Shown piece after piece: positions 11,252 through 41,198 of a stretch of DNA of 64,000 nt. Both the position numbers and the translations under genes were made by a program. The first letter of the stretch is position 1; every line of letters begins with the position of its first letter. A model generated the notes under the pieces. The model did not search any database and was not told the DNA's origin. It saw only the letters and a program-made list of their open reading frames with translations. The stretch spans positions 1 to 64,000 of the forward strand of contig JAPMXV010000029.1 of the NCBI GenBank assembly GCA_026936335.1, written 5' to 3'. This DNA comes from Mantamonas sphyraenae STR306 (taxonomy: Eukaryota > Protista > CRuMs).

Positions 11252-12739
11252 TCACTCCTCCTCCACACGTTGCCTCTTCTCCACCTCCGGTTCCTCCTCC
11301 TCCTCCACCTCATCCCTCCCTCGCTTCCTGGTCTCCCCTGACTTCCCCACAGCGACCCTTGCCGGAGCAGCTCCCCTCCCCACCCACCCAATCACCCTCT
11401 CCATTACCTCATCCGGCAGTGTCACCCACCCTTCCCACCCTGCCTCCTCCACATACTCATCCATCCCTCCACACTCAAACATCACCTCCCTCTCCTCCCC
11501 GTTCATCACCAATGCCACCTCCATCGCTTCATCCACCTGTCCACCCCACCCAATCCAATGCCACGCCTTCCTCCACCCTTCCTTCCTCACCATCTCCACC
11601 GTTTTCATCCTCGGCTTTGCACCCCACTCCCGCAACACCTCCACAATCTCATCATCCCCATCCTCAACTGCTACCTCCAGCGCAGTGTACCACCCTTGAC
11701 TACCTGCAATCGTGTCCACAGGCACACCCCACTCCTTCAATTCAGCCATCTTCTCCACATCCCCACACTCCACAAACTCCTCGTGCTGCTCCTTGTTCCT
11801 CTCCAACAGTGACAGCAACGCATCATTTTCAACGCCGTGGATAATGCAGCACGACCGATTGCCTTGCATTGCCTGCACCAGTGATGCTTTTCCTTTGTCC
11901 CCAATGCTGCTACCAAGGAACAGTGCCTGCAGGCTGCAGTTCTCAGCCAGCGCCTGAGCAAGTGCTGCTGCTCCTTCGTCGCAGATTTTGTTGCGTCCGA
12001 GGTACAGTATCTGCAAGCTGCAGTTCTCAGCCAGCGCCTGAGCAAGTGCTGCTGCTCCTTCGTCGCAGATTTTGTTGCCTCCGAGGTCCAGTGTCTGCAA
12101 GCTACTGTTCACACACAGCGCCTGCGCAAGTGCAGCTGCTCCTTCATATCCAATGCTGTTGTCGCCGAGGAACAGTGTCTGCAAGCTGCTGTTCTTCTTC
12201 AGTGCCTGCGCCAGTGCTGCTGCTCCATCTGCCCCGATGCTGTTGTCGCCGAGGTCCAGTGCCTGCAAGCCGCTGTTCACACAAAGTGCCTGCACCAGCG
12301 CAGCTGCTCCTTCATACCCTATGCTGTTGGAGCCGAGGGACAGTGTCTGCAAGCTGCTGTTCTCACCCAGTGCCCGCCCCAGAGCTGCTGCGCCTTCTGC
12401 CCCGAATCTGTTGTGGCTGAGGATCAGTGTCTGCAAGCTGCTGTTCTGAGCAAGTGCCTGCGAAAGTGCCGCTGCTTCGTGGTCACTCAAGTACCAATTG
12501 CAAAGGTCCAATTTCTGTGTTCGAGGTGTCAACACACGTCCCACCCTTCCTACTCACCATCACACCCACCCTACCCCCATCCCTCCTCCCCTTCCCCGTG
12601 CGACGCACGTCACGCTCACCAACTCCCTCCCGATTTCTTTCCGTCAACTCACCCTTCCCTGAGCCTCCAAAGCTTCCACAATCCGCCCATGGTCCCCACT
12701 CTGCAACGATTCCACCCATTCTTCTCTTTCCAAGCCCAT
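11252..12739 (-). CDS. LRR-ANK-F-box-like paralog A (8 LRR, NLS-like tail); exons 12739-12653 and 12514-11252
   Basis: Exon 1 MGLEREEWVESLQSGDH...AQGR then GTGAGT donor; acceptor ACACAG; 28-aa LRRs; ankyrin-like TALEVAVEDGDDEIVEVLREWGA; WVTLPDEVMERVIGW. Confidence 0.88.
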
Positions 12740-14762: not shown

Positions 14763-16350
14763 TCACTCTCCCCTCCCCACCCACCCAATCACCCTCTCCA
14801 TTACCTCATCTGGAAGCGTCACCCACCCTTCCCACCCTCCCTCCTCCAGATACTCCTCCATCCCTCCACACTCAAACATCACTTCCCTCTCCTCTCCATT
14901 CATCACCAACGCCACTTCCATTGCCCCATCCACCTGTCCACCCCACCCAATCCAATGCCACGCCTTCCTCCACCCTTCCTTCCTCACCATCTCCACCGTT
15001 TCCATCCTTGGCTTTGCACCCCACTCCCGCAACACCTCCACAATCCTCTCATCCCCTCGCGTCACTGCTCTCTCCAGCGCATTCTTCCTCCCCCTCTCCC
15101 CTGCAAACGTGTCGACAGGCACCCCCCACTCCATCAACTCTCTCATCCTCTCCACATCCCCACACTCCACAAACTCCACGTGATGCTTCCTGTTCCTCTC
15201 CAACAGTGACCACAAAGAGGTATCGAAAACGCCGTAGATCCTCCAGCAGGACCGATTGCCTTCCATTGCCCTTGTCAGTGCTGCTTCTCCCTCATCCATG
15301 ATGCTGATCCTGCTGAGGTCCAGCGACTGCAAGCTGTTGTTCTCAGCCAGCGCCTGCGCCAGTGCTGCTGCTCCTTCATCCCCGAGGCTGTTGTCGTTAA
15401 CTTCCAGCTTCTGCAAGCTGCTGTTCACACTCAGTGCCTGCGCCAGTGCTGTTGCACCGTCTGTTCCGATATTGTTGAGGCTGAGACCCAGTGTACGCAG
15501 GCTACGGTTCTCACACAGTGCCTTGGCCAGCGCTTTTGCTCCTTCTGTTCCGATGTTGTTGGTGTAGACAAAGAGTGTCTGCAAGCTGCTGTTCACACAC
15601 AGTGCCTTTGCCAGCGCTGCTGCTCCTTCTGCACCAACGCTGTTGCCCCAGAGCTTCAGTGAGTGCAAGCTGGAGTTCTCGCAAATTGCCTGCGCCAGCG
15701 CTGCTGCTCCTTCTGCACCGACGCTGTTGCCCCAGAGGTTCAGTGAGTGCAAGCTGGAGTTCTCGCAAATTGCCTGTGCCAACGCTGCTGCCCCTTCTGC
15801 CCCGATGTTGTTGTTGCCGAGAAAGAGTTTCTGCAAGCTGTTGCTGGCAATCAGTGCTTGCGCAAGTGCTGATGCGCCTTCTGCCTCGATGCTGTTGTCG
15901 TTGAGGTACAGTGTCTGAAGGCTGCGGTTCATACACAGTGCCTGCGCCAGTGCTGCTGCCCCTTCGTCCCCGATTCTGTTGCCGCTTAGTTCCAGTTTCT
16001 GCAAGCTGCTGTATTCACTAAGCACCTGCGCCAGTGCTGCTGCCCCTTCGTCCCCGATACTGTTCTTGTTCAACGACAATTTCCTCAAGCTCCTGTTCTT
16101 TCCCAGCGCCTTGGCCAGTGCTACTGCCTCATTGTCTCCCAACTGCTTGTGAACAATGATCAACTTCCGTGCTCCACGTGTCAGCACACATTCTTTCCCT
16201 TCGCCCACTCGCTTCTGGACGTGACACAACCATTCCGTCCGCGTTCCGGGCGCAACACACCTCTTCCTCTGCCTCCAGAGCACTGCCAATCCGTGCATGA
16301 TCCCCGCTCTGCAGCAAAGCCACCCAATCATCCATCTTTGTTGAGCTCAT
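14763..16350 (-). CDS. Paralog B (11 LRR, no tail); exons 16350-16261 and ~16163-14763
   Basis: Exon 1 MSSTKMDDWVALLQSGDH...; the family CAG acceptor reads CGG here, with an in-frame AAG 3 nt later. Confidence 0.82.
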
Positions 16351-16759: not shown

Positions 16760-18375
16760 TCACTCCTCCTCCACACGTTGCCTCTTCTCCACCGCTTCCT
16801 CCTCTTCCTCTTCCACCTCATCTCTCTCTCGCTTCCTCGTCTCCCCTGACCTCCCCACAGCGACCCTTGCCGGAGCAGCTCCCCTCCCCACCCACCCAAT
16901 CACCCTCTCCATCACCTCATCTGGAAGTGTCACCCACCCTCCCCACCCTGTCTCCTCCACATACTCCTCCATCCCACCACACGCAAACATCACCTCCCTC
17001 TCCTCAACATTCATCACCAACGCCACCTCCATCGCTTCATCCACCTGTCCACCCCACCCAATCCAATGCCACGCCTTCCTCCACCCTTCCTCCCTCACCA
17101 TCTCCACCGTTTCCATCCTTGGCTTTGCACCCCACGCTCGCAACACTTCCACAATCCTCTCATCCCCTTTCTCCACTGCTCTCTCCAGCGCCGTAGTCCT
17201 TCCGTACCCCCGTGCAAACGTGTCCACAGGCACACCCCACTCCTTCAACGCAGCCATCCTCTCCACATTTCCACACTCCACAAACTCCACGTGATGCTTC
17301 CTATTTCTCTCCAACAGTGACTGATAAGCGGCATTGCGAACGCCTTCGATGTTCCAGCACGACCGATTGCCCTCCATTGCCTGCCCCAGTGCTGCTGCTC
17401 CTTCGTCCCCGATTCTGTTGTCGCTGAGGTACAGTATCTGCAAGCTGCTGTTCTCCCTCAGCGCCTGCGCCAGTGCTGTTGCACCTTCTTCCCCAACGCC
17501 GGTACCGGTGAGGTCCAGATTCTGCAAGCTGCGGTTAACACTCAGCGCCTGCGCAAGTGCAGCTGCTCCTTCTGCCCCGATGCGATTGCTGACGAGTTGC
17601 AGAGTCTGAACGCTGCTGTTCTCAATCAATGCCTGCGCCAGTGCCGTTGCTCCATCGGCCCCGATCCCGTTGTCCCAGAGATTCAGTCTCTGCAAACTGC
17701 TGTTCGCAATCAGTGCCTTCGCAATTGCAGCTGCTCCATCTTCCCCGATGCTGTTGAGCCTGAGGTTCATTGCCTGCAAGCTGCTGTTCTCCCTCAATGC
17801 CTGCGCAAGTGCCGTTGCTCCATCTGCCCCGATCCCGTTGTCCCGGAGGTCCAGTGTCTGCAAGCTGCTGTTCCCACCCAGCGCCTGCGCAAGTGCCGTT
17901 GCTCCATCTGCCCCGATCCCGTTGGCGCTGAGATCCAGTCTCTGCAAGCTGCTGTTCCCACCCAGTGCCTGCGCCAGTGCTGCTGCGCCTTCTGCCCCGA
18001 TGCTGTTGTTGTAGAGTTTCAGTGTCTGCAAGCTGCTGTTTAAACAAAGTGCCTGCGCCAGTGCGGCTGCTCCTTCGTCTCCAATTCTGTTCCAGCCGAG
18101 GCTCAGTATCCGCAAGCTTGTGTTCGTCCCTAGCGCCTTGGCCAGTGCTACTGTCCCATAACCTCCGAGGTTCGCGAATTCAATACTCATCATCTGTGCT
18201 CCACGTGTCAGCACACACTCCATTGTTGCTCTTCATCCGCTTCCTGACGTGCCAAACATCCCTCCGCATCCCAGTCGCAACCCACCTCTCCCACTGCCTC
18301 CAGTGCGCTACAAATCCGTTCATGATCCCCGCCATTCAGCAACTTGCGCCACTCTTTCCTCTTCGACGACTTCAT
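16760..18375 (-). CDS. Paralog C (10 LRR, NLS-like tail); exons 18375-18286 and 18193-16760
   Basis: Exon 1 MKSSKRKEWRKLLNGGDH; GT..CTGAC..CAG intron; family domains intact. Confidence 0.9.
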
Positions 18376-18949
18376 ATCGTCTGCGTTGCCCGTTGCGAGA
18401 GCGTGAGCACCTCCGTTCCCTCCCCCTCCCTTCTGCCGCCGCCCTCCTCCTCCCTCTCCACCACCACTCCATCCCACACGTCCTCTGTCCACCCCACTCC
18501 ACCTACATTGCGACCCTGCGAGAATGTGACAGCTCCAAGATGCGTTGCCTCCTGCTGCGCTTGCACCCCGCCCACTCCCTTCCCCCCTCCCTCCCCGCTC
18601 CCTCCGATTCCAGCAAAGTCACCCCTCCCCTCTCCACCTCCCCTGAACTCTAAACTCGACCCCTATCCCCTCAAAAGCACGTCCATTCCACCTGCCGATC
18701 ACCCACCACCAGCCACTGTTCACTCCTCCTCCACAACGGTTTGAGAGGTGTACCCACCCAGTGCACACTGCCGGATGAGGTGATAAACAGGGTCTTTGGA
18801 TGGATCGGAAAGACATAGTCCCACACGTGACCAACCTGAACGTGCTGCCGATTTTTCGCGTTCAGCCGGTGCGTGGAACGGGGTTGAAGCGGAGAGCAGA
18901 TGGGCAGCAGCGTGTGAGATCAGCTCACATGAAATACCGTCCAGACACA

Positions 18950-20728
18950 ATGACCACACAGGGGGCAGTCGACTGGACCACCCTGTTGCGCGACGGCGAC
19001 GAGAAGCAGATTTGTTCCGCGTTGGAGGCTGCAGGAAAGGCAAGGCGAGGATACGAGAGCGTGCAATGGCCGTGCCGTGCTGCTGACACGCGTCGTCAAA
19101 ACCAGGAATTGGATCTTGCGCAAAGACGTGTCGAAAAGTCTGCCGCGGCCACAGATGTGTTGGACGCTTTTCACAACAGAATCGGTGTCCACGAAGCAGG
19201 CGCACTGGCCAAAGCACTGGAGGCGAACACAACCATCCAAACACTGGACTTGTCTTTGCAAAGCACATGCGATGACGGAGCGGTGGCATTGGCCGCCGCA
19301 CTGGCAACAAACACGTGTTTGCGCACACTGAATCTGAAAGGCAACTGCATCGGGGCCGAGGGGACAGCTGCACTTGCCCAAGGATTGTCACAGAATACTT
19401 CATTGCAGGGATTGCATCTTGGGGCGAACAGCATTGGCGCAGAAGGAGCTGCTGCACTCGCACAGGCATTGGTTGTGAGTGTGCACCTGACCTCACTGGA
19501 CCTCACCAACTGCGACATCGGCACCCGTGGGGCGTGCGCACTGGCCGTTGCACTGGAAGAGAATCACGGGTTGCGCACACTGAACCTCAACCACAACAAC
19601 ATCGGCCCAAGAGGAGCAACTGCGTTGGCCACCGCCGCTGTGGCACGGAGCTGCAGTTTGGAGATGCTCACGCTCGGCGACAACGTGGTAGGCGCAGACG
19701 GAGCAGCAGCCATGGCCAACGCATTGCGTGGAAACCACTGTTTGCAGACACTGGACCTCAGCGCCAACTGGATCGGGGCAGAAGGGGCTGCAGCACTGGC
19801 CAAGGGGCTGCAAGGAAACACCAGCCTGTAGGAGCTCAACCTCGATCGCAACGCCATCGTCTCGGAAGGAGCCACAGTGCTGGCCGAAGCGCTGGAGGGA
19901 AGCAGCAGTTTGCAGACGCTGACACTCGGGAGAAACGGAATCGGGCCGGAAGGGGCCGCGGCTCTGGCCAGGGCACTGCAGAAGAACGTCAGCTTGCACA
20001 CACTGGACCTGAACAACAACAGCGTCGGAGAGCATGGGACCACAGTGCTGGCCGAAGCGCTGGAGGGAAGCAGCAGTTTGCAGACGCTGAAACTTGTCAG
20101 GAACGGCGTCGGCCCGGACGGGGCCGTGGCTCTGGCCAGAGCTTTGGAGAGGAACCGCAGCCTGCAGAGACTGTTCCTGCGAAACAATAGAATGGGTGCA
20201 CAGGGGGCAAAGGCACTGGCCGAGGCACTGGAGGAGAACAGGAGCTGCTGGGAAATCGACGGCATCGGGCAGAGTGCGACCACAGCAAGAAATCGTGACA
20301 TGGCCCATTCGTTCGTGATGAGTGCTGGACGAGGAGATGTCAAAGCGATGGAGGAGCTGCTGGCTTGGGGTGTGTCTGTGGACACGTGTGCAGGGGATGG
20401 AGGAGGCAAGGAGGAGACTGCGTTGGTGAGTGCTGTGCAACGCGAGGATGAGGCAGTGGTCGAGTTGTTGCGAGCGTGGGGTGCGAAACCAAGGATGGAA
20501 ACGGTTAAGATGGTGAGGGAGGCAGGGTGGAGGAAGGCGTGGCATTGGATTGGATGGGGTGGAGAGGTGGATGTGGCGATGGAGACGGCGCTGGTGATGA
20601 ATGGGGAGGAGAGGGAGGTGATGTTTGAGTGTGGTGGCATGGGAGGGTATGAGGCGACGTGTGATTGGTGGACGGTGCCGGATGAGCTGATGGAGAGGGT
20701 GTTGGAGTGGCTGGCCAAGGGAGGGTGA
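18950..20728 (+). pseudogene. Inverted, divergent paralog D (~14 LRR) with an in-frame TAG at 19829-19831
   Basis: ORFs 18800-19831 and 19877-20728 share a frame and are separated by one TAG at the Gln (CAG) position of an LRR; ankyrin and WTVPDELMERVLEW C-terminus intact; putative GC-AG intron at 19040-19105. Confidence 0.8.
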
Positions 20729-23024: not shown

Positions 23025-24378
23025 TCACAGATGGCCGATCCACTTTGCCACACGTTCCATCACCTCGTCTGGAACGGTGCTCCACAGGGCCGTGGGAACA
23101 TACCCTTCCATCCCTCCTGCTTCAAACATCACATCCCGTTCCTCAGCGTTCATGGCCAGGACGACTTCCAATGCGGTGTCTTGCTCCACGGTGCCCAACA
23201 CCCAATGCCACGGTTTCCGCCATTCCCAATTTGAACCCCCGATCGATTTTGTGAATGAATACGTCGCCTGTGCCCCCCAACGCCTCAGTTGTGCAACCAC
23301 AGCATCCTGTCTGGCTTCCATGGCCAGCTGCAAGGCGGTATGCCCGTGCTCGCCTGCCCGAGCGTCCACAGCGACACCCCACTCTCTCAACTCGCCCATG
23401 GTGGCAATATCGCCACGCTGCGCAGCTGTTGTAAACTTCCTCGCTTGTGTCAAGTTGAACACCCTCTTGCAGCAGTCGATGCGCAAGCAAGTCGTGTTGT
23501 TGGTCAAAGCAGTCGTCAATTCCGTTTGCCCCAAGTCGTTGATGGGATTCTTGGCCAGATCAAGAATCTGCAGAGTGCTGTTTGAATGCAGGGCTGTGGC
23601 GATGGCGATGGCTCCGTCGTCATCGATGCTATTGTGGTAGAGATTCAGAGACTGCAGGGTGCTATTTGCCAACAGAGCAGTAGCCAAGGCAACAGCGCCT
23701 TTTCATTCGATGTGGTTGTGGGCGAGTGAAAGGTCTGTCAGCCTGACGTTGTGTGTGAGCGCTGCAGCGAGGGCCTCTGCGCCTTGGCAGCTGATTTGGT
23801 TGTGGGTGAGTGTCAAGATGCACAGAGAAGTGTTTGCAGAAAGCCAACTGGCCAACGAGGCGGCAAAGGCGTCGCCAACGGTGTTGAAGGCGACGTTCAG
23901 CTCGTTCAACGTGTTGTTTGCATCCAGACGGAACGACTCGTCATCGAGGTTGGTTTTCAGGAGACTGAGGAGAGCAGAGAGTTGTTGTGGTTCAACGACT
24001 CGATGATTGCAATGCATCCTTTGCTTTCGATGACATTGCTGTTCAGCTTTAGCGTGTGGACGGTTGTGTTGGCGGTGAGGGCCTTGGCAAGGGCGGTTGC
24101 GCCGTGAGGGCCTACACCGCTCCGTGTGAGGTCCAGGACTTGAGGGTGGTGTTTGTGGCAATGCCAAATGATGCCAAAGAGGCGATTTGGGTGTCTGTGA
24201 GCTGCCATTGCCGCAGTGAGAGCGACTTGAGAGCGGGGGTGGGGTGGAGGCGAGTCAGGGCAGGTCCTTGCGCAGCAGCAAGGGGGAATGCGATTCAGCG
24301 TACTTTCCCAGCGTGTGACAGTGCCTCTTCAATAGACAATGGGTCGGAGGGGGAATCCAGCAGGTGATTCCAGTCCAT
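23025..24378 (-). pseudogene. Divergent frameshifted paralog E
   Basis: Exon-1-like MDWNHLLDSPSDPLSIEEALSHAGK then GTACGC (24378-24304); LRRs split across ORFs 23957-24208, 23703-24167 and 23025-23687; ankyrin GHTALQLAMEARQDAVVAQLRRWGA; WSTVPDEVMERVAKW. Confidence 0.8.
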
Positions 24379-24454: not shown

Positions 24455-26802
24455 TCACCCATCTCCTACGACCCACCCAATCACCCTCTCCATCACCTCA
24501 TCTGGCAGTGTCATCCACTCTGCACTCGGTTCATACGCCTCCATCCCACCACACTCAAACATCACCTCCCTCTCCTCCCCATTCATCACCAACGCCACCT
24601 CCATCGCCTCATCCACCTGTCCACCCCACCCAATCCAATGCCATGCCTTCCTCCACCCTGAATTCCTCACCATCTCCACCGTTTCCATCCTCGGCGTCGC
24701 TCCCCACGCTCGCAACACCTCCACAATCCTCTCGTCCCCTCGCTTCACTGCTCGCTCCAGCGCAGTTTCCTTTCCACTCTCCCCTGCAAAGGTGTCCACA
24801 GGCACACCCCACTCCCTCAAATCAGCCATCCTCACCACATCCCCACACTCCACAAACTCCACGTGCAGCGTCTTGTTTCTCTCCAGCAGTGACTGATAAG
24901 CCCAATGGTGGTGGTAAAGGATGCTCCAGCACGACCGATTGCCACGCATCGCCTGCGCCAGAGCTGCTGCTCCTTCTCCACCAATGCTATTGTCTCTGAG
25001 GCGCAGTTCCTGCAAGCTGCGGTTCTCACTCAGTGCCTGCGCCAGTGCTATTGCTCCTCCGACCCCGATGTTGTTGTAGCTGAGTTCCACAGTCTGCAAG
25101 CTTCTGTTCTCACTCAGTGCCTGCCCCAGTGCTACTGCTCCTTCTGCCCCGATACTGTTGCTGTGGAGATCCAGTGCCTGCAAGCTGCTGTTCTCACTCA
25201 GTGCCTGCGCCAGTGCCGCTGCTCCTTCGTCTCCAATACTGTTGTCGCCGAGTTCCAGTTTCTGCAAGCTGCGGTTCTCACTCAGTGCCTGCGCCAGTGC
25301 TATTGCTCCTCCGACCCCGATGTTGTTGTAGCCGAGTTCCAGAGTCTGCAAGCTACTGTTCTCGCTCAGTGCCTGCGCCAGTGCTGCTGCTCCGTCGTCC
25401 CCGATGCTGTTGTTTCGGAGGTCCAGTCTCTGCAAGCTGCAGTCCATACTCAGAGACTGCCCCAGTGCGGCTGCTCCTTCTGCCCCGATGCTGTTTTCGC
25501 TGAGGTGCAGTGTCCGCAAGCTGCTGTTCTCACTCAGTCCCTGAGCCAGTGCTGCTGCTCCATCGTCCCCGATGCTGTTGTTGTAGAGATCCAGTGTCTG
25601 CAAGCTGCTGTTTAAACAAAGTGCCTGCCCCAGTGCTGCTGCTCCTTCGTCCCCGATGCTGTTGCCATAGAGTTCCAGAGTCTGCAAGCTGCTGTTCTCG
25701 CTCAGTGCCTGCGCCAGTGCTGCTGCCCCTTTTCCCCCGATGCTGTTGCTGCTGAGGTCCAACGTCTGCAAGCTGGTGTTCTCACTCAGTCCCTGCGCCA
25801 GTGCTGCTGCTCCATCATTCCCAATCCTGTTGTTCCAGAGGTTCAGTTTCTGCAAGCTGCTGTTCATAAGCAGAGCCTGCCCCAGTGCTGCCGCTCCTTT
25901 GTCACCGATGCTGTTGTGGCTGAGTTCCAGAGTCTGCAAGCTGCTGTTCATACTCAGAGCCTGCGCCAGTGCTGCTGCTCCTTCGTCCCCGATGCTGTTG
26001 TGGCTGAGGTCCAGAGTCTGCAAGCTGTTGTTCTCACACAATGACTGCGCCAGCGCTGCTGCTCCTTCGTCACCGATGCTGTTCGTGCTGAGTTCCAGAG
26101 TCTGCAAGCAGCGATTCTCACACAATGACTGCGCAAGTGCCGTTGCTCCTACTGTCCCTATGCTGCTGCCCCCAAGCTTCAGTATCTGCAAGCTGGTGTT
26201 CTCACACAATGCCTGACCCAGTGCTGCTGCTCCTTCTGCCTCGATGTTGTTGTCGCTGAGACCCAGTATCTGCAGGCTGTGATTCTCACACAATGACTGC
26301 GCAAGTGCCGTTGCTCCTTCTGTCCCGATGCTTGCGTAACCAAGCTTCAGTGTCTGCAAGCTGGTGTTCTTACTTAGTGCGTGCGCCAGAGCTGCTGCGC
26401 CTTCGTCCCTGACTCTGTTACTTCTGAGGTCCAGTGTCTGCAGGCTACTGTTCGTATACAGAGCCTGCGCCAGTGCGGCCGCTCCTTTGGCTCCAATTCC
26501 GAAGCCGAGCTTCAGCGTCTGCAAGCTTGTGTTCGTCCCCAGCGCCTTGGCCAGTGCTACGGCCTCATTGTCTCCCAGCTTCTGCGTGATATTAATGCTC
26601 ATAATACTCAGCTTCTGTGTCCCACGTGTCAGCACACACACACCATGGTTTCCCTTCTCCCGCCCGCTTCTGCACGCGCCAAACATCCCGCTGCGTTCCA
26701 GGCGCAACCCACCTCTCCCTCTGCCTCCAGTGCCCTACAAATCTGTGCATAATCCCCGCTCTGCAGCAAAGCCACCCAATCGTCCGTCCGCAGCGAGTTC
26801 AT
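24455..26802 (-). CDS. Paralog F (20 LRR, the longest; no tail); exons 26802-26713 and 26614-24455
   Basis: Exon 1 MNSLRTDDWVALLQSGDY; conserved intron; intact ORF. Confidence 0.9.
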
Positions 26803-27443: not shown

Positions 27444-29365
27444 TCACCACCCTCCCCTCCCTATCCACCCAATCACCCTCTCCATCACCTCATCCGGCAG
27501 TGTCACCCACTGCGCAGTCGCCTCATACCCCTCCATCCCTCCACACTCAAACATAACCTCCCTCTCCGCCCCGTTCATCACCAACGCCACCTCCATCACC
27601 TCATCCACCTGCCCACCCCACCCAATCCAATGCCACTCCTTCCTCCACCCTTCCCTCCTCACAATCTCCACCGTTTCCATCCTCGGCTTTGCACCCCATG
27701 CTCGCAACACCTCCACAATCCTCTCATCCCCTCGCTTCACTGCTCGTTCCAGCGCAGTCATCGTCCCTCCATCCCCTGCAAACGTGTCCACAGGCACACC
27801 CCACTCCATCAACTCTCTCATCTTCTCCACCTCCCCACACTCCACAAACTCCACATGCTGCGACCAGTTCCTCTCCAACAGCGACTGCAACGCATCATTG
27901 TCAGCGACGTCGATGCTCCAGCACGACCGATTGTCTTCCATTGCCTGCACCAATGATGCTTCTCCTTCTTCCTCGATGTTGTTGCTGTCGAGGTACAGAG
28001 TCTGCAAGCTGCTGTTCTCCCTCAGCATCTGAGCCAGTGCTGCTGCTCCTTCGTTGCCAATGTTGTTGCACTCGAGGTCGAGTGTCTGCAAGCTGCGCAA
28101 CCCACTCAGTGCCTGCGCTAGTGCGGCTGCTCCTTCGTCCCCGATACCGTTGATACGGAGACTCAGTGTCTGCAAGCTGTTGTTCTCACTCAGTGCCTGT
28201 GCAAGTGCTGCTGCTCCTTTGTCCCCGATGTTGTTGTATCCCAGGGTCAGTACCCGGAGGCTGCTGTTCTCACTCAGTGCCTGCGCAAGTGCTGTGGCTC
28301 CTTCTGCCCCTACGCTGTTTTTGCCGAGGTACAGTGTCTGCAAGCTGCTGTTCCCCCTCAGTGCCTTCCCCAGTGCTGCTGCTTCTTCGTCCTTGATGCT
28401 GTTCAAGCTGAGGTTCAGTGTCTGCAAGCTGCTGTTCTCCCTCAGTGCCTTCCCCAGTGCTGCTGCTCCCTCTGCACCAACTCTGTTCCATCTGAGATCC
28501 AGATTCTGCAAGCTGCGGTTCACACTCAGTGCCTGCGCCAGTGACGCTGCCCCTTCGTCCCCAAAGCCGTTGCAACCGAGGTCGAGTGTCTGCAAGCGGT
28601 GGTTCTCCCTCAGTGCCTGCGCCAGTGCGGCTGCCCCTTCTGCCCCGACACAATTCCGACTGAGGTGCAGAGTTTGCAGGCTGCTGTTCACACTCAATCC
28701 CTGCCCAAGTGCCGCTATTCCATCTGCACCGATCCTGTTGTTGCCGAGGTCCAGTGTCTGCAAACTGCGGTTCCCACTCATTCCCTGTGCCAGTGCGGCC
28801 GCGCCTTCGGCTCCTTCGGCTCTGATGCTGAAGCAGAGGTTCAGTGTCTGCAAGCTGCTGTTTTCAATCAGCGCCTGCCCCAGTGCTGCTGCTCCCTGTC
28901 CACTGAAGGGATTGTACGCGAGGTTCAGTGTCTGCAAGCTGTTGTTCTCTCGCAAAGCCTGCGCCACTGCCGCCACTCCTTGTTCTCCGATCTTGTTGTA
29001 ACTGAGGTCCAGTGTCTGCAAGCCACTGATGCCATCCAGAGCCTGCGCCACTGCGGCCGCTCCTTCGCCCCCGATGCTGTTGTCACTGAGGTCCAGTGTC
29101 TGCAAGCTGCTTTTTGACCCCAGCGCCTTGGCCAGAGTTACTGCCTCTTCGTCACCTAGATACTCGCCACGGATACACCAGCACTGTGCTCCACGTGTCA
29201 GCACACACTCCCTGGTTGTCCTTCATCCGCTTCTTGACGTGACAAACATTCGTCTGTGTCCCGATCCCAACCAACCTCTCCCTGTGCCGCCAGTGCACTA
29301 CAAATCCGTGAACGATCCCCGCTCCGCAGCAGTTCCTTCCAATCATCCGTCTCCAGATCGCCCGT
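27444..29365 (-). CDS. Paralog G (15 LRR, no tail); family ATG position reads ACG; exons 29365-29276 and 29183-27444
   Basis: Exon 1 (T)GDLETDDWKELLRSGDR...AQGE; exon 2 open; start codon uncertain. Confidence 0.72.
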
Positions 29366-30857: not shown

Positions 30858-32487
30858 TCATCCACAGGCATTTCGTACGATGATGAACACGACGACTACG
30901 AAGATGAGCTCATGCCATTCACGAGTAGCAGCACGCCACTCGCTCTCGCATTCTCGACATAGGGGACTTTCCACCAGCGTCCTCGTTGGCACGACACACC
31001 TCGCCTCTTGCTTCCTCGACTCACATGACCCCATTACAGTGGCCATTGACGGTGCAGCACCCCTTCCCATCCACCCAATCACCCTCTCCATCACCTCATC
31101 CGGCAGTGTCACCCACCCTTCCCACCCTCTATCCTCCACATACTCCTCCATCCCACCACACCCAAACATGACTTCCCTCTCCTCCCCATTCATCACCAAC
31201 GCCACCTCCATCGCCTCATCCACGTGTCCACTCCACCCAATCCAATGCCACGCCTTTCTCCACCCTTCCTCCGCCACCGTCTCCACCGTTTCCATTCTTG
31301 GCTTCGCACCCCACACCCTCAACACCTCTACCAACCCGTCATCCCCTCGCTTCACTGCTCGCTCCAACGCGGTGTCCTCCCGCCCAAACCCAGCGAATGT
31401 GTCCACAGGCACACCCCACTCTCTCAACTCTCTCATCTTCTCCACATCCCCACACTCCACAAACTCCACGTGCTGCTTCTTGTTCCTCTCCAACAACAAC
31501 TGCAGTGCTTCAGCGTTGACACCCGTGATGCTCCAGCAACTTCGATTGCTTTCCAATGCTATTGTCAGAGCTGCTGCCCCTACCAACCCGATGCTGTTGT
31601 TCCAGAGGTGCTCAGTGTCCAGTGTCTGCAAGCTGCTGTTCACACTCAGCGCCTGCGCCAATGCTGCTACACCTTCGTCCCCGATGCTGTTGTCTCTGAG
31701 GTCCAGTTCCTGCAAGCTGCTGTTCTCTCTCAGTGCCTGCGCCAGTGCTGCTGCTCCTTCGTCCCCGATGCTGTTGTTGTCAAGCTTCAGTTTCTGCAAG
31801 CTGCCGTTCTCACTCAATGCCTGCGCCAGCGCTTCTGCTCCTTTGTCCCCGATGCTGTTATTGCTGAGGTACAGTTCCTGCAAGCTGCTGTTCTCTCTCA
31901 GTGCCTGCCCCAGTGCTGCTGCTCCTTCCGCCCCGATGCTGTTTTCGCTGAGGTTCAGGCTCTGCAAGCTGTTGTTCTCCCTCAGTGCCTGTGCCACTGC
32001 TGCTGCTCCTTCCGCCCCGATGCTGTTGTAGCTGAGGTACAGTTCCTGCAAGCTGCTGTTCTCACTCAGTGCCTGCGCCAGTGCTGCTGCTCCTTCGTCC
32101 CCGATTCCGTTCCAGCTGAGGATCAGTGTCTGCAAGCTGCTGTTCTCTCTCAGTGCCTGCCCCAGTGCTGCTGCTCCTTCCGCCCCGATGCCGTTGCTGC
32201 TGAGGTTCAGTTCCTGCAAGCTCCTGTTCCCCCTCAGTGCCTGTGCCAGTGCGGCTGCCTCATTGTCACCCAGACGATGGCCACGAATACGCAAACACTG
32301 TGTTCCACGTGTCAGCACACACACACTCCATGGTTTCCCTTCTCCCGTCCGCTTCTGCACGCGCCAACCATCCCGCTGCGTTCCAGGCGCAACCCACCTC
32401 TCCCTCTGCCTCCACTGCGCTGTGAATCCGTGCATGATCCCCGCTCTGCAGCAACGCCACCCAATCAACCACCTTCAGATTGCTCAT
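30858..32487 (-). CDS. Paralog H (9 LRR, unique extended C-terminus); exons 32487-32398 and 32297-30858
   Basis: Exon 1 MSNLKVVDWVALLQSGDH; conserved intron; sequence after GRGAAP differs from all other copies. Confidence 0.87.
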
Positions 32488-33134: not shown

Positions 33135-34383
33135 TCACCCAGCTCTCCCCACCCACGCAATCACCCTCTCCATCACCTCATCCGGCAGTGTCATCCACTG
33201 TGCAGTCGGTTCATACGCCTCCATCCCACCACACGCAAACATCACCTCCCTCTCCGCCCCGTTCATCACCAACGCCACCTCTATCGCCTCATCCACCTGT
33301 GCACCCCACCCAATCCAATGCCACACCTTCCTCCACCCTTCCCTCGTCACCATCTCCACCGTGTCCGTCCTCGGCTGCGCTCCCCATGCCCGCAATGCCT
33401 CCACAATCCTCTCATCCCCTCCCTTGACTGCCCGTTCCAGCGCAGTCATCGTCCCTCCTTCCCCAGCAAACGTGTCCACAGGCACACCCCACTCCATCAA
33501 CTCTCTCATCTTCTCCACATCCCCACACTCCACAAACTCCACATGCTGCTTCTTGATGCTCTTCAAAAGCGACTGCAAAGTGCCGTTGCGGACGCCCATG
33601 ATGTCCCAGCACGAACGATTGCCTTGCATTGCCTGCACCAGCAATGCTGCTCCTACCGTCCCGATGCTGTTGTCACCAAGGAACAGTGTCTGCAGGCTGC
33701 GGTTCTCACTCAAGGCCCGCGCAAGTGCCGGTGCTCCTTCGTCCCCAATGCTGTTGTTGCTGAGGTCCAGTTCCTGCAAGCTGCGTAACCCAATCAGCGC
33801 CTGCGCAAGTGCCGCTGCTCCTTCGTCCCCAATGCTGTTGCGGCTGAGGTTCAGTGTCTGAAAGCTGCGTAACCCAATCAGTGCCTGCCCCAGCGCTGCT
33901 GCTCCTTCGTCCCCGATCCTGTTCTTGCCGAGGTTCAGTGTCTGAAAGCTGTTGTTCCCATTCAGTGCCTGCGCCAGTTCTGCTGCTCCTTCTGCCCCGA
34001 TTCTGTTGCGGCTGAGGTCCAATGTCTGCAAGCTGCTGTTCTCTCTCAGTGCCTGCGCAAGTGCTGCTGCTCCATCTGCCCCGATCCTGTTGAAGTCGAG
34101 CTTCAGTGTCTGCAAGCTGCTCCTCCCACTCAGTGCCTGTGCCAGTGCGGCTGCCTCATTGTCACCCAGAAGATCGCCACAAATACGCAAATACTGTGTT
34201 CCACGTGTCAGCACACACACCCCCCATGGTTTCCCTTCTCCCGTCCGCTTCTGCACGCGCCAAACATCCCGCTGCGTTCCAGGCGCAACCCACCTCTCCC
34301 TCTGCCTCCACTGCACTACAAATCTGTGTATGATCCCCGCTCTGCAGCACACTTTGCCAATCAACCATCTCCAGACTGCTCAT
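33135..34383 (-). CDS. Paralog I (7 LRR, no tail); exons 34383-34294 and 34193-33135
   Basis: Exon 1 MSSLEMVDWQSVLQSGDH; intact ORF. Confidence 0.9.
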
Positions 34384-34936: not shown

Positions 34937-36980
34937 TCACTCCTCCTCCACACGTTGCCTCTTCTCCACCTCTTCTTCCTCTTCCTCCTCCTCGTCATCT
35001 CTCTCTCGCTTCCTCGTCTCCCCTGACCTCCCCACCGCGACCCTTGCCGGTGCAGCACCCCTTCCCACCCACCCAATCACCCTCTCCATCACCTCATCCG
35101 GCAGTGTCACCCATCCTTCCCACCCTGTCTCCCCCACATACTCCTCCATCCCACCACACGCAAACATCGCCTCCCTCTCCTCCCCATTCATCACCAATGC
35201 CACCTCCATCGCCTCATCCACCACCCCACTCCACCCAATCCAATGCCACTCCTTCCTCCACCCTTCCCCCCTCACCATCTCCACCATTTCCATCCTCGGC
35301 TTCGCTCCCCACGCTCGCAACATCTCCACAATCCTCTCATCCCCTCCCTTCACTGCTCTCTCCAGCGCAGTAGTCCTTCCGTACCTCCGTGCAAACGTGT
35401 CCACAGGCACACCCCACTCCTTCAACGCAGCCATCCTCTCCACATTTCCACACTCCACAAACTCCACGTGATGCTTCCCATTTCTCTCCAACAGCGACTG
35501 CAACGCATCATTCCGAACGCCTTCGATGTCCCAGCACGACCGATTGCCCTCCATTGCCTGCCCCAGTGCTGCTGCTGCTTCTGCCCCGATGCTGTTCCAG
35601 CCGAGTTCCAGCGTCTGCAAGCTGCTGTTCTCTCTCAGTGCCTGCCCCAGTGCTGCCGCTCCCTCGCTACCGATTCTGTTGCTGCTGAGGTTTAGTCTCT
35701 GCAAGCTCCTGTTCTCCCTCAGTGCCTGCCCCAGTGCTGCCGCTCCCTCGCTACCGATTCTGTTGCTGCTGAGGTTCAGTCTCTGCAAGCTGCGGTTCAC
35801 ACTCAGTGCCTCCGCCAGTGCAGCTGCGCCTTCGTCCCCGATTCTGTTGTCGTTGAGGTACAGAGTCTGCAAGCTGCGGTTCACACTCAGCGCCTGCGCA
35901 AGTGCCGCTGCTCCTTCTGCCCCGATGCTGTTCCAGCCGAGTTCCAGCGTCTGCAAGCTCCTGTTCTCACTCAGTGCCTGCCCCAGTGCTGCCGCTCCCT
36001 CGCTACCGATTCTGTTGCTGCTGAGGTTCAGTGTCTGCAAGCTCCTGTTCTCCCTCAGTGCCTGCCCCAGTGCTGCCGCTCCCTCGCTACCGATTCTGTT
36101 GCTGCTGAGGTTCAGTCTCTGCAAGCTGCGGTTCACACTCAGTGCCTCCGCCAGTGCAGCTGCGCCTTCGTCCCCGATTCTGTTGTCGTTGAGGTACAGA
36201 GTCTGCAAGCTGCTGTTCGCACTCAATGCCTGCGCCAGTGCTGCTGCGCCTTCTTCCCCGATGCTGTTGTTAATGAGGTACAGTATCTGCAAGCTGCTGT
36301 TCTCCCTCAGTGCCTGCGCAAGTGCCGCTGCTCCTTTGTCCCCGATGCTGTTGTTAATGAGGTACAGTATCTGCAAGCTGCTGTTCTCCCTCAGTGCCTG
36401 CGCAAGTGCCGCTGCTCCTTCGTCTCCAATACTGTTGTCGTTGAGGATCAGTGTCTGCAAGCTGCTGTTCTTCTTCAGTGCCCGCGCTAATGCGGCTGCT
36501 CCTTCGTCCCCGATCCTGTTCTTGCCGAGGTTCAGTGTCTGTAAGCTGCGCAACCCACTCAGTGCCTGCGCAAGTGCTGCTACTCCATCTGCCCCGATCC
36601 TGTTGGTGTTGAGGTCCAGTGTCTGCAAGCTGCTCTTCCCACTCAGCACCTGAGCCAGCGCTGCTGCCCCTTCGTCCCCGATCCTGTTGTAGTCGAGGTA
36701 CAGTGTCTGCAAGCTGCTCCTCCCACTCAGTGCCTGCGCCAGTGCGGCTGCCTCATTGTCACCCAGACGATGGCCACGAATACACAAACACTGTGTTCCA
36801 CGTGTCAGCACACACACACCCCATGGTTTCCCTTCTCCCGTCCGCTTCTGCACGCGCCAAACATCCCGCTGCGTTCCAGGCGCAACCCACCTCTCCCTCT
36901 GCCTCCACTGCGCTGTGAATCCGTGCATGATCCCCGCTCTGCAGCACACTTTGCCAATCAACCATCTCCAGATTGCTCAT
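34937..36980 (-). CDS. Paralog J (15 LRR, NLS-like tail); exons 36980-36891 and 36790-34937
   Basis: Intact ORF; contains an internal duplication of a 4-LRR block. Confidence 0.9.
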
Positions 36981-37533: not shown

Positions 37534-38731
37534 TCACTCCTCCTCCACACGTTGCCTCTTCTCCACCTCTTCTTCCTCTTCCTCCTCCTCGTCATCTCTC
37601 TCTCGCTTCCTCGTCTCCCCTGACCTCCCCACCGCGACCCTTGCCGGTGCAGCACCCCTTCCCACCCACCCAATCACCCTCTCCATCACCTCATCCGGCA
37701 GTGTCACCCATCCTTCCCACCCTGTCTCCTCCACATACTCCTCCATCCCACCACACGCAAACATCGCCTCCCTCTCCTCCCCATTCATCACCAATGCCAC
37801 CTCCATCGCCTCATCCACCTGTCCACCCCATCCAATCCAATGCCACGCCTTCCTCCACCCTTCCTTCCTCACCATCTTGACCGTTTCCATCCTCGGCTTC
37901 GCTCCCCACGCTCGCAACACTTCCACAATCCTCTCATCCCCTTTCTCCACTGCTCTCTCCAGCGCCGTCTCTTTTCCTCCATTCCCTGCAAACGTGTCCA
38001 CGGGCACGCCCCACTCCCTCAACTCTCTCATTTTCTCCACAACCCCACACTCCACAAACTCCACGTGCTGCCTCTGGTTCCTCTCCAACATCGACCGCAA
38101 CGCGACATCGAAAACGCCCTCGATCTTCCAGCACGACCGATTGCCTTGCATTGCCTGCGCCAGTGATCCTCCTCCTACGGTCCCGATGCTGTTGTAGCTG
38201 AGGTCCAGAGTCTGCAAGCTGCTGTTCTCAATAAGTCCCTGCGCCAGTGCTGCTGCTCCCTCGCTACCGATTCTGATGCTGCTGAGGTTCAGTCTCTGCA
38301 AGCTCCTGTTCTCCCTCAGAGCCTGCCCCAGTGCTGCTGCTCCTTCGTCCCCGATTCTGTTGAGGCTGACGTCCAGTTTCTGCAAGCTGCTGTTCTCAAT
38401 AAGTCCCTGCGCCAGTGCTGCTGCTCCTTCGTCCCCGATTCCGTTCCAGCTGAGGATCAGTGTCTGCAAGCTGCTGTTCTCCCTCAGTGCCTGCGCCAGT
38501 GCGGCTGCCTCATTGTCACCCAGAAGATCGCCACAAATACTCAAACACTGTGTTCCACGTGTCAGCACACACACACTCCATGGTCGCCCTTGATCCGCTT
38601 CTTGCACGTGCAACACGGCCCTCTGCCAAGTCCCAACCCACCTCTCCCTTTGCCTCCACTGCGCTGTGAATCTGTGCATGATCCCCGCTCTGCAGCAACG
38701 CCACCCAATCAACCACCTTCAGATTGCTCAT
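37534..38731 (-). CDS. Paralog K (5 LRR, the shortest; NLS-like tail); exons 38731-38642 and 38547-37534
   Basis: Intact ORF; conserved intron. Confidence 0.9.
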
Positions 38732-39361: not shown

Positions 39362-41198
39362 TCACACATCTTTCCCCACCCACCCAAGCACCCTCTCCAT
39401 CACCTCATCCGGCAGTGTCATCCACTCTGCACTCGGTTCATACGCCTCCATCCCACCACACTCAAACATCACCTCCCTCTCCTCTCCATTCATCACCAAC
39501 GCCACCTCCATCACCTCATCCACCTGTTCACCCCACCCAATCCAATGCCACACCTTCCTCCACCCTTCCCTCGTCACCATCTCCACCGTGTCCGTCCTCT
39601 GCTGCGCTCCCCATGCCCGCAATGCCTCCACAATCCTCTCATCACCTCCCTTGACTGCCCGTTCCAGCGCAGTCATCGTCCCTCCATCCCCTGCAAACGT
39701 GTCCACAGGCACACCCCACTCCATCAACTCTCTCATCGTCTCCACCTCCCCACACTCCACAAACTCCACATGCTGATCCCGGTTCCTCTCCAACAGCGAC
39801 TGCAACGCATCATTGTCAGCGACGTCGATGCTCCAGCACGACCGATTGCCTTCCATTGCCTGCACCAATGATGCTTCTCCTTCTTCCCCGATGTTGTTGC
39901 TGTCGAGGTACAGAGTCTGCAAGCTGCTGTTCTCCCCAAGCACCTGAGCCAGTGCTGCTGCTCCTTCGTTGCCAATGTTGTTGCACTCGAGGTCGAGTGT
40001 CTGCAAGCTGCGCAACCCACTCAGTGCCTGCGCCAGTGCGGCTGCTCCTTCGTCCCCGATTTCGTTGATACGGAGACTCAGTGTCTGCAAGCTGTTGTTC
40101 TCACTCAGTGCCTGCGCCAGTGCTGCTGCTCCTTTGTCCCCGATGTTGTTGCCGTCGAGGTACAGGGTCTGCAAGCTGCCGTTCTCACACAGTGCCTGCG
40201 CAAGTTCTGTTGCTCCTTCTGCCCCTACGCTATTTTTGCTGAGGTACAGGGTCTGCAAGCTGCTGTTCACAGTCAGTGCCCTCCCGAGTGCTGCTGCTCC
40301 TTCGTCCCCAATGCTGTTGCTGTTGAGGTTCAGTGTCTGCAAGCTCCCGTTCTCACTCAGTGCCTGCCCCAGTGCTTTTGCACCTTCAACCCTGATGCTG
40401 TTCAAGCCGAGGTTCAGTGTCTTCAAGCTGCTGTTCTCCCTCAGTGCCTGCCCCAGTGCTGCTGCTCCTTCGTCGTCGGTGCTGTTGTAATTGAGGCTCA
40501 GTGTCTTCAAGCTGCTGTTCACCCGCAATCCCCGTGCAATTGCTGCTGCTCCTTCTGCCTCGATGCCAATGTTGTTGAGGTTCAGTGTCTGCAAGCTATT
40601 GTTCTCATTCAGCGCATGCGCCAGTGCTGCTGTACCCTCTGCCCCGATGCTGTTGCTTCCGAGGTCCAGTGTTTGCAAGCTGCCGTTCTGGCACAGTAAC
40701 TTCGCCAGTGCTGCTGCTCCCTCGCCTGCAATGCTGTTCTTCCTGAGGTCCAGTGTCTGCAAGCTGCTGTTCTCACTGAGTGCCTGCTCAAGTGCTGCGG
40801 CTCCTTCATCCCCGATGCTGTTGTCGCAGAGATTCAGTGTCTGCAAGCTGCTGTTCTCCCTCAATCCCCGTGCCATTGCTGCTGCTCCTTCTGCCTCGAT
40901 TTTGTTGCTCGTGAGGTTCAGTGTCTGCAAGCTGCTGTTCTCCCTCAGTGCCTGTGCCAGTGCGGCTGACTCATTGTCACCCAGACGATGGTTACGAATA
41001 CACAAACACTGTGTTCCACGCGTCAGCACACACACACTCCATGGTTTCCCTTCTCCCGTCCGCTTCTGCACGCGCCAAACATCCCGCTGCGTTCCAGGCC
41101 CAACCCACCTCTCCCTTTGCCTCCACTGCGCTGTGAATCTGTGCATGATCCCCGCTCTGCAGCAACGCCACCCAATCAACCATCTCCAGATTGCTCAT
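39362..41198 (-). CDS. Paralog L (14 LRR, no tail); exons 41198-41109 and 41008-39362
   Basis: Intact ORF; conserved intron. Confidence 0.9.

What the first reader, a model, noticed from the sequence alone, without database searches (positions are those of the whole stretch)
11385..11570. F-box-like motif at the C-terminus after ankyrin repeats (PRANC-like orientation) in intron-bearing nuclear genes
Seen: every copy ends the constant region with WRKAWHWIGW..VDEAMEVALVMN...W(V/M)TLPDEVMERVIGWV, and it is retained even in the divergent D and E. Established: canonical cellular F-boxes (LPxExxxxI) are N-terminal, whereas ANK plus C-terminal F-box is typical of poxvirus PRANC proteins and Orientia Ank effectors. 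Inference: either a host domesticated a pathogen-type effector tail or the arrangement arose convergently. A SOCS/Cul5-box-like role is an alternative.
Basis: partly seen in the sequence, partly recalled or inferred. Interest (0 to 1): 0.82.

Follow-up and report, generated by a model that had tools for sequence, protein, structure and literature searches.

The report
F-box-like helix ending orphan tail module
More than 200 repeat proteins of the protist Mantamonas sphyraenae, many encoded near chromosome ends, finish with the same conserved 65-residue module; its last helix looks like the first helix of an F-box, but the module is not a recognisable F-box, PRANC or SOCS domain, and a link to ubiquitin ligases remains untested.

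Summary
The window holds 17 complete copies and one fragment of the tail, from the WRKAWHW stretch to TLPDEVMERVIGWVGRG. The window starts at a telomere of Mantamonas sphyraenae. The core P-D-E-x-M-E-R occurs 222 times in the 25 Mb genome, always at a protein's C-terminus. It follows LRR_6 arrays plus two ankyrin repeats, true multi-ankyrin domains, or unassigned N-termini. Selection acts on the protein (dN/dS 0.016 at dS 1.4).

The F-box reading holds only for one helix. Profile-profile comparison with this genome's own 30 best F-boxes aligns 20 columns, the LP plus helix 1 (probability 45%, P 2e-4). Helices 2 and 3 cannot exist, because 71% of copies stop 14-20 residues after the proline. 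No member hits Pfam F-box, F-box-like, PRANC or SOCS_box. The L of LP can be V or Q, whereas D, E, M, E and R are invariant. The strongest conservation runs 45 residues upstream, where F-boxes have no counterpart. A profile search of 1.84 billion proteins found no relatives, viral or bacterial, so nothing supports a domesticated pathogen tail.

My reading: an orphan constant docking module. A helix-1-only, CP77-like SKP1 docking site stays possible (about 25%). The scan had already met this family on other DNA (s1-579931).

The parts
11366..11578 (-). Conserved C-terminal module of the copy in the finding, from GWRKAWHW to GWVGRG. Family pattern: H-x8-D-x3-E..L.MN..ER..MF..GGM..Y...W.T.PDEVMER[VI]..W
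   Evidence: Columns invariant across 36 diverse members: H, D, N, E, M, F, G, Y, W, T, P, D, E, M, E, R.
11372..11422 (-). Terminal amphipathic helix TLPDEVMERVIGWVGRG, the F-box helix-1 look-alike
   Evidence: hhalign against the genome's own F-boxes aligns it to F-box columns 4-23. AF2 predicts a helix here at low confidence. dN/dS of PDEVMER is 0.016.
11255..11371 (-). Optional 39-residue basic/acidic tail (AAPARVAV..RKRGRDE..EKRQRVEEE) before the stop at 11252-11254. It is present in 18 of 76 copies. It is not F-box helices 2 and 3.
   Evidence: pLDDT is below 50.
11579..11797 (-). Two ankyrin repeats between the LRR array and the tail module
   Evidence: A profile of A2 matches ankyrin and DARPin chains in PDB at profile positions 24-92. 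Pfam Ank models are below threshold on this copy. pLDDT is about 90.
11798..12544 (-). RNI-type LRR_6 array and its C-cap, in the same ORF
   Evidence: PF13516 E 1.8e-31, 6 stretches.
14766..14975 (-). Tail module, paralogue (short class)
16874..17086 (-). Tail module, paralogue (charged-tail class)
18765..18818 (+). Isolated fragment holding only the last helix (CTLPDEVINRVFGWIGKT, then a stop), with no module upstream in frame
20525..20725 (+). Tail module, divergent paralogue on the plus strand (TVPDELMERVLEWLAKGG)
23028..23231 (-). Tail module, divergent paralogue (TVPDEVMERVAKWIGHL)
24458..24658 (-). Tail module, paralogue
27447..27650 (-). Tail module, paralogue
31059..31265 (-). Tail module, paralogue with an aberrant long read-on after GWMGRG
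33138..33338 (-). Tail module, paralogue
35051..35263 (-). Tail module, paralogue
37648..37860 (-). Tail module, paralogue
39365..39565 (-). Tail module, paralogue
41870..42073 (-). Tail module, paralogue
44716..44928 (-). Tail module, paralogue
48142..48345 (-). Tail module, paralogue
51731..51940 (-). Tail module, paralogue
55039..55242 (-). Tail module, paralogue

Best explanation
The finding is the end of a lineage-specific, all-helical C-terminal module of about 65 residues. At least 222 Mantamonas sphyraenae proteins share it. Their front ends are variable binding domains: hypervariable RNI-type LRR arrays plus two ankyrin repeats, true multi-ankyrin domains, or unassigned sequence. Shown: the module is one conserved unit, always terminal and under strong purifying selection at the protein level. 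Shown: its last helix matches only the LP plus helix 1 of an F-box, and it belongs to no known family by profile. Inferred: the module is the constant 'handle' of an adaptor-type family, which docks many different recognition domains onto one shared partner or effector. Inferred: the LPDE helix is an integral part of that handle, and its likeness to F-box helix 1 is convergent or a remnant, not evidence of a working three-helix F-box. The partner is unknown. SKP1 is the leading named candidate and is treated as a separate rival.
For: The motif occurs 222 times in the genome and 0 times in the control. At least 150 scored family members were found, many about 4 kb from contig ends. The window starts with (CCCTAA)n. 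The same module follows different N-termini: strong Ank in L083 and L084, LRR_6 in L090, L092 and L093, and nothing assignable in L091 and L095. Sixteen columns spread over 55 residues are invariant, including polar H, D, N, E, Y, T, D, E, E and R. dN/dS is 0.245 in the core and 0.016 in PDEVMER, at dS of 1.0-1.4. No Pfam family covers the module in 55 members. The tail profile finds nothing in PDB, and a profile search of 1.84 billion representatives gives only a spurious Cys-repeat hit. The F-box likeness is confined to 20 columns. The stop lies 14-20 residues after the proline in 54 of 76 copies.
Against: No structure of usable confidence was obtained: tail pLDDT is 46-59. That the module folds as one domain is therefore inferred from conservation only. 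No partner, no expression data and no localisation are known. The helix-1 match to F-boxes exceeds all 1820 shuffles, so a real SKP1 link is not excluded. The absence of relatives is weakened by the absence of this genome's own proteins, and probably those of other mantamonads, from the searched libraries: neither search returned a self-hit.
Confidence: 0.5

Rival explanations
1. Minimal C-terminal F-box. The terminal helix, LP plus helix 1 only, docks on SKP1, as reported for cowpox CP77. The family would then be a very large set of SCF substrate receptors in reversed, PRANC-like orientation that recognise targets with variable LRR or ANK surfaces and send them for ubiquitination.
For: All consensus positions of helix 1 in this genome's own F-boxes (L, P, E, V, L, I, F, L) have matching or conservative residues in the tail. 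hhalign gives probability 45% and P 2e-4. The F-box HMM scores the tails above every shuffle, and only 2 non-F-box background hits of that strength occur in 243,275 residues. F-box clusters are the first named families in the language-model look-alike list, though at a score of only 0.77. SKP1 is present. The literature reports that poxviral F-boxes lack helix 3, that CP77 binds Skp1 with helix 1 alone, and that most Skp1 contacts come from helix 1 and the loop before it (PMC4353913). A variable-repeat-plus-constant-end architecture is what substrate receptors look like.
Against: No F-box or PRANC profile hit in any member. The tails score 6 bits, against 22-33 bits for true helix-1 fragments. 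The L of LP, a key F-box residue, is V or Q in 9 of 76 copies, whereas D, E, M, E and R are invariant, and an F-box does not require those. The 45 conserved residues upstream have no F-box counterpart. A match of this strength is expected some tens of times by chance in a whole proteome.
Confidence: 0.25
2. Intramolecular or self-association element. The last helix packs back on the module or on the ankyrin/LRR solenoid as a cap, latch or oligomerisation helix, and recruits no ubiquitin machinery.
For: The helix is always coupled to the upstream 45-residue core and co-conserved with it. Invariant charged residues on the helix (D, E, E, R) fit fixed salt bridges within a fold. AF2 predicts three to four helices for the module.
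Against: hhalign finds no similarity between the tail and the family's own ankyrin repeats (probability 0.4%). In L083 and L084 a linker of about 50 residues separates the last ankyrin repeat from the module. The models are too uncertain to show any packing.
Confidence: 0.15
3. BC-box / SOCS-VHL-like helix. The single terminal helix binds Elongin C and recruits a Cul2- or Cul5-type ligase, as in ankyrin-SOCS-box (ASB) proteins.
For: A BC box is a single helix at the C-terminal end of repeat proteins. The tail reads T-L-x-x-x-V-x-x-x-V, close to [APST]-L-x-x-x-[CSA]-x-x-x-[AILV]. An Elongin C gene is present: L102 has two exons, ending EIALELLMAANFLDT.
Against: Position 6 is V, L or I in all 76 copies, never C, S or A. 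No Cul2 or Cul5 box can follow, since the protein ends. No SOCS_box hit in any member, nor at family loci in the genome scan.
Confidence: 0.05

Closest known systems
Cellular F-box domain (Pfam PF00646 / PF12937), e.g. FBXL-type F-box plus LRR proteins
   Same: The LP-x-E-V-h-x-x-h-h-x-aromatic-h pattern of helix 1; it coexists with an LRR domain in one protein; a constant small module is joined to variable recognition repeats.
   Different: It sits at the extreme C-terminus instead of the N-terminus. Helices 2 and 3 are absent, with only 12-18 residues after LP in most copies. There is no profile hit. L is replaceable. Extra residues D, E, M, E and R are invariant, and a conserved 45-residue stretch upstream is foreign to F-boxes.
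Poxvirus ANK/PRANC proteins (Pfam PF09372), especially cowpox CP77 with a helix-1-only F-box; Orientia Ank effectors
   Same: Repeats come first and a truncated F-box-like helix sits at the very C-terminus. Both are multigene families at genome ends. There is literature precedent that helix 1 alone can bind Skp1 (PMC4353913).
   Different: No PRANC profile hit. No sequence relatives in any virus or bacterium among 1.84 billion representatives. The front end is mostly RNI-type LRR with only two ankyrin repeats. This is a cellular, nuclear gene family of a free-living protist.
ASB proteins (ankyrin repeats plus C-terminal SOCS box) and other BC-box receptors
   Same: Ankyrin repeats followed by a short C-terminal helix of the form T-L-x-x-x-h-x-x-x-V; Elongin C is encoded in the genome.
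   Different: The diagnostic small residue (C/S/A) is V. There is no Cul5 or Cul2 box and no SOCS_box profile hit.
Subtelomeric variant gene families with a constant end and a variable repeat body
   Same: Tandem arrays that start at telomeres, with a variable number of LRR units and constant ends.
   Different: No signal peptide, transmembrane segment or anchor was noted in the tail. The constant end is a folded helical module, not a membrane anchor signal.

Membership tests
F-box (PF00646 / PF12937) | Profile match at or above the Pfam gathering score | tested here: not met
   No F-box family is listed for 55 members at E<=10. The six-frame PF12937 scan of the genome gives 79 matches, none at family tails.
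F-box (PF00646 / PF12937) | Domain of about 45 residues made of three helices (H1-H2-H3) | tested here: not met
   The stop lies 14-20 residues after the proline in 54 of 76 copies; the remaining 22 read on further, 18 of them by more than 40 residues into the low-complexity charged tail. hhalign covers F-box columns 4-23 of 57 only.
F-box (PF00646 / PF12937) | LP motif and the hydrophobic pattern of helix 1 | tested here: met
   P is invariant; L in 67, V in 6 and Q in 3 of 76 copies. V5, M6, V/I9, W12 and V/M/L13 match the genome's own consensus LP.EVL..I..FL. hhalign P 2e-4.
F-box (PF00646 / PF12937) | Binds SKP1 | not testable with these tools
   This needs a binding experiment. The one modelling attempt gave no verdict; see Tried and rejected.
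PRANC (PF09372) | Profile match to PRANC | tested here: not met
   Not among the families hit by any of 55 members at E<=10.
PRANC (PF09372) | Ankyrin repeats N-terminal to a truncated F-box-like motif at the extreme C-terminus | tested here: met
   Two ANK repeats lie before the module in the window copies. L083 and L084 have strong multi-ANK domains. The motif is terminal.
PRANC (PF09372) | Sequence relatives among poxviruses or intracellular bacteria | tested here: not met
   The word search found none. The profile search of 1.84 billion representatives gave one spurious hit only.
SOCS box / BC box (PF07525) | SOCS_box profile match | tested here: not met
   No hit in 55 members. The genome scan gives two sub-threshold hits elsewhere, none at family loci.
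SOCS box / BC box (PF07525) | BC-box consensus [APST]-L-x3-[CSA]-x3-[AILV] followed by a Cul2 or Cul5 box | tested here: not met
   Position 6 is V in 72, L in 3 and I in 1 of 76 copies. The protein ends 5-8 residues after the helix.
Ankyrin repeat | 33-residue helix-turn-helix repeats recognised by a profile | tested here: met
   The A2 profile matches ankyrin and DARPin chains over positions 24-92 (best chain E 4e-24, single stretches weak). 26 of 55 members hit Ank_2. The tail module itself is not ankyrin-like.

The most novel reading that the evidence does not exclude
A free-living, deep-branching eukaryote carries more than 200 genes for cytosolic receptors, many of them subtelomeric. Each receptor joins a hypervariable LRR (or ANK) recognition surface to a minimal, helix-1-only C-terminal F-box embedded in a new module. 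Together they would form a diversifying 'recognise-and-degrade' SCF repertoire. This orientation is otherwise known only from poxvirus and Orientia effectors, and here it would have arisen independently in a cell.
Probability: 0.2. Interest if true: 0.8.

Novelty: new variant of a known kind. Interest (0 to 1): 0.45.

Why it matters
If the tail docks on SKP1, Mantamonas would have one of the largest substrate-receptor repertoires per megabase known. It would be built in the reverse order to all cellular F-box proteins and linked to fast-evolving LRRs, which would make it a candidate innate-immune or self/non-self system in a lineage close to the base of Amorphea. It would also show that the PRANC-like layout is not confined to pathogens. 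If the tail does not dock on SKP1, the module is still a new, strongly constrained protein domain that marks about 1-2% of this organism's genes. It also warns that a 13-residue LPxE helix is not enough to call an F-box.

Tried and rejected
1. Continuation of the F-box in a downstream exon. Many copies stop inside GTGAG-like strings just after GWVGRG. However, the DNA alignment shows that the next gene's shared upstream motif starts about 300 nt later, with no conserved coding block between. Rejected.

2. The LPDE helix as helix 2 of a degenerate ankyrin repeat. By eye it resembles GDERIVEVLRAWGA. hhalign of the tail against the family's own ANK region gives probability 0.4%. Rejected.

3. Complex prediction with a full-length SKP1 and residues 23-166 of A2. 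I used P0012, which is 87% identical to the genome's own SKP1 C-terminal exon. The score was 0.14 against a mark of 0.34. The verdict was 'no answer', so it is evidence neither for nor against. The genome's own SKP1 gene is spliced (exons at C35:37348-37449 and 38361-38504).

4. Structure. AF2 on ANK plus tail gives tail pLDDT of 46-53, and on the tail alone gives a mean of 58.6 and pTM of 0.29. Foldseek against PDB found no match. The models are too poor for any fold claim.

5. RNA evidence. No run was listed for the stretch. The 3' end, splicing and expression remain unverified.

6. ESM Atlas look-alikes. The best hits are unnamed clusters at 0.86, and F-box clusters score only 0.77, below the level at which such hits mean anything.

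7. The only hit of the big profile search, P0121, is a Cys-rich tandem-repeat protein that matches the GGM..Y..W stretch four times. It is spurious.

8. A conserved C-terminal dipeptide as degron or sorting signal. The ends are heterogeneous, with GG in only 14 of 54 short copies. Rejected.

9. DNA-level homogenisation as the cause of conservation. dS is 0.8-1.4 with dN/dS of 0.016-0.25. Rejected for the diverse set, although the window copies themselves are recent and similar.

Full report
WHAT IS THERE

The finding lies at the 3' end of a 430-codon open frame on the minus strand (11252..12544). The frame encodes six or more RNI-type LRR_6 repeats (PF13516, E 1.8e-31), a short ankyrin-like stretch and a tryptophan-rich tail. 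The tail runs from GWRKAWHW to WVTLPDEVMERVIGWVGRG and is followed here by a 39-residue basic/acidic extension.

A six-frame motif scan finds the same tail 18 times in the window. Sixteen copies lie on the minus strand, including the one in the finding. One complete copy lies on the plus strand (20525-20725). One isolated last-helix fragment also lies on the plus strand (18765-18818).

The window begins with (CCCTAA)n. The assembly matches the published Mantamonas sphyraenae FALCON assembly: 25,061,354 bases, 78 contigs, longest contig 751,365, N50 contig 375,077 (against PMC10492846). This confirms the lead from earlier agents.

SIZE AND SHAPE OF THE FAMILY

A search of the genome with 148 residues of one tail returns 372 candidates, and all 150 that were scored match. 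Many sit about 4 kb from a contig start, pointing towards the end. The degenerate DNA pattern for P-D-E-x-M-E-R-[IVM] occurs 222 times, and the reversed control occurs 0 times.

Codon choices differ between clusters (GAT/GAC, GAG/GAA, AGG/AGA/CGN) while the peptide stays the same. Over 36 diverse members, dN/dS is 0.48 before the module, 0.245 in its core, 0.20 in the last helix and 0.016 in PDEVMER, at dS of 0.8-1.4. The constraint is therefore on the protein, not on the DNA.

Divergent, non-telomeric members carry the same module behind other front ends:
- strong multi-ankyrin domains (L083, L084);
- weaker LRR_6 arrays (L087, L090, L092, L093);
- nothing assignable (L091, L095).

The module is thus an independent C-terminal unit of about 65 residues. 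Sixteen columns are invariant: H, D, N, E, M, F, G, Y, W, T, P, D, E, M, E, R.

IS IT REALLY C-TERMINAL?

Many copies stop within GTGAG-like strings, which raised the possibility of a splice donor and a further exon carrying the rest of an F-box. The DNA alignment argues against this. Identity among copies ends right after GWVGRG. The copies then fall into a short class and a charged-tail class. The shared upstream motif and ATG of the next gene follow after about 300 nt.

In 76 distinct copies the stop lies 14-20 residues after the proline in 54, and more than 40 residues after it in 18. No RNA run was listed, so this rests on DNA comparison alone.

TEST OF THE F-BOX, PRANC AND SOCS READING

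(a) Curated profiles. No member of a 55-sequence set hits F-box, F-box-like, PRANC or SOCS_box, even at E<=10. The only recurrent hits are ankyrin models on the region before the tail. A six-frame PF12937 scan of the whole genome recovers 79 F-boxes and none of the family tails. A SOCS_box scan gives two sub-threshold hits elsewhere.

(b) Solved structures by sequence. The profile of LRR-cap, ANK and tail matches ankyrin and DARPin chains over positions 24-92, which corresponds to two repeats. The tail-only profile finds nothing.

(c) Profile against profile. I aligned the 30 best F-boxes of this genome (A3; consensus LP.EVL..I..FL....L.....VC...........LW). hhalign of the tail profiles A4 and A6 against A3 gives one local match of 19-20 columns. 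The stretch GWVTLPDEVMERVIGWVGRG aligns to F-box columns 4-23, which are the LP plus helix 1, at probability 45% and P 2.2e-4. Nothing aligns to helices 2 and 3.

(d) Calibration. An HMM of A3 scores the 91 tails at a median of 6.2 bits (maximum 11.8), always on HMM positions 4-18.
- Across 1820 composition-preserving shuffles the maximum is 6.1 bits.
- In 243,275 residues of other open frames from this genome, only two non-F-box hits reach 6.2 bits, about 6e-4 per 70-residue segment.
- Real F-boxes cut down to helix 1 score 22-33 bits. This is an upper bound, since they trained the model.

The likeness is therefore real and above composition. It is far weaker than a true helix 1. At proteome scale, some tens of such matches are expected by chance.

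(e) Residue logic. Of the F-box hallmark LP, the P is invariant but the L is V or Q in 9 of 76 copies. D, E, M, E and R are invariant, although no F-box needs them. The heaviest conservation lies in the 45 residues upstream (MN.EER..MF..GGM..Y), where F-boxes have no counterpart.

(f) Structure. AF2 is confident for the LRR cap and ankyrin repeats (pLDDT about 90) but not for the tail (46-53; tail alone 58.6, pTM 0.29). It predicts helices only. Foldseek finds nothing. No fold statement is possible.

(g) Relatives. The word search over 5.8 billion proteins found nothing for the tail region. The exhaustive profile search over 1.84 billion representatives returned one spurious Cys-repeat protein. 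Neither search returned a self-hit, so this genome's proteins are not in those libraries, and other mantamonads may be missing too. Even so, no viral or bacterial relative exists there, so the 'domesticated pathogen tail' idea has no support.

WHAT KEEPS THE F-BOX IDEA ALIVE

All consensus positions of helix 1 are matched. The poxvirus literature states three relevant points (PMC4353913):
- the viral C-terminal F-box lacks helix 3;
- CP77 binds Skp1 with essentially helix 1 alone;
- most Skp1 contacts come from helix 1 and the loop before it.

The genome encodes SKP1, and a divergent SKP1 paralogue lies 4.5 kb upstream of it. It also encodes Elongin C. The architecture, variable recognition repeats plus a constant small end, is that of substrate receptors.

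The BC-box alternative fails its consensus: V sits at the C/S/A position in all copies and no Cul box can follow.

A complex prediction with SKP1 gave no verdict and counts neither way. The genome's own SKP1 is spliced.

VERDICT

I read the tail as an orphan constant docking module of an adaptor-type family (0.5). The rivals are:
- a CP77-like minimal F-box that binds SKP1 (0.25);
- an intramolecular or self-association helix (0.15);
- a BC-box-like Elongin C site (0.05).

The same family was met by this scan on another contig (s1-579931). That follow-up reached the same cautious conclusion, that the ligase-adaptor role rests on one short terminal helix.
- the genome-wide count;
- the module's occurrence behind other front ends;
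- the selection analysis;
- the calibrated F-box comparison;
- the exhaustive negative homology search;
- the CP77 precedent.

Noticed in passing
L002 (G000:C35:33786-33926, + strand), 4.5 kb upstream of SKP1 (L001, C35:38361-38504): A second, divergent SKP1-like gene lies in tandem with SKP1 (PF01466, 53.5 bits against 104.9). Its C-terminus differs (PWLHNG instead of WCEE) and it ends in a long acidic/serine tail. It could be a dedicated adaptor for a non-canonical partner set.
   Followed up: partly
window 11255-11371 (-) and the same place in 17 other copies held: There are two tail classes. Most copies stop 5-8 residues after the helix; about a quarter add an extension of about 39 residues with RKRERD and KRQR clusters around an acidic run, which looks like a bipartite NLS. 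In copy 27503 the extension's last codons reappear out of frame, so the classes interconvert by small indels.
   Followed up: partly
window 18765-18818 (+): A lone last-helix fragment (CTLPDEVINRVFGWIGKT, then a stop) has no module upstream. It sits where the array changes strand, and is probably the relic of a deleted inverted copy.
   Followed up: partly
window 36790-36980 (-), 5' end of the copy ending at 34940: A candidate first exon (ATG at 36980, about 30 codons) ends at GAG|GTGGGT. A candidate intron of about 100 nt ends at ACACAG, just before the codons for CLCIRGHRLGDNE. There is no RNA evidence.
   Followed up: no
G000 contig starts (C4, C7, C9, C16, C18, C19, C22, C27, C31, C38, C41 and others), about 3.95-4.15 kb from the end: At many chromosome ends the first family tail sits at almost the same distance (about 4.0-4.15 kb) from the contig start, on the minus strand. 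This implies a conserved subtelomeric block with the gene's 3' end facing the telomere. This window is an exception: a 1553-aa LRR_4/LRR_8 protein with a TRP-like C-terminal region comes first (833-5494).
   Followed up: no
L102 (G000:C37:132100-132880, + strand): An Elongin C gene in two exons (from the YIRLYSAEDHVFII stretch to EIALELLMAANFLDT). It was missed at the default threshold of the Skp1_POZ scan because each exon scores low on its own.
   Followed up: partly
window 57969-63995 (-): A large open frame of 2008 or more codons with seven IPT/TIG domains, a beta-propeller repeat and an ephrin-receptor-like Cys-rich domain bounds the array on the centromere side.
   Followed up: no
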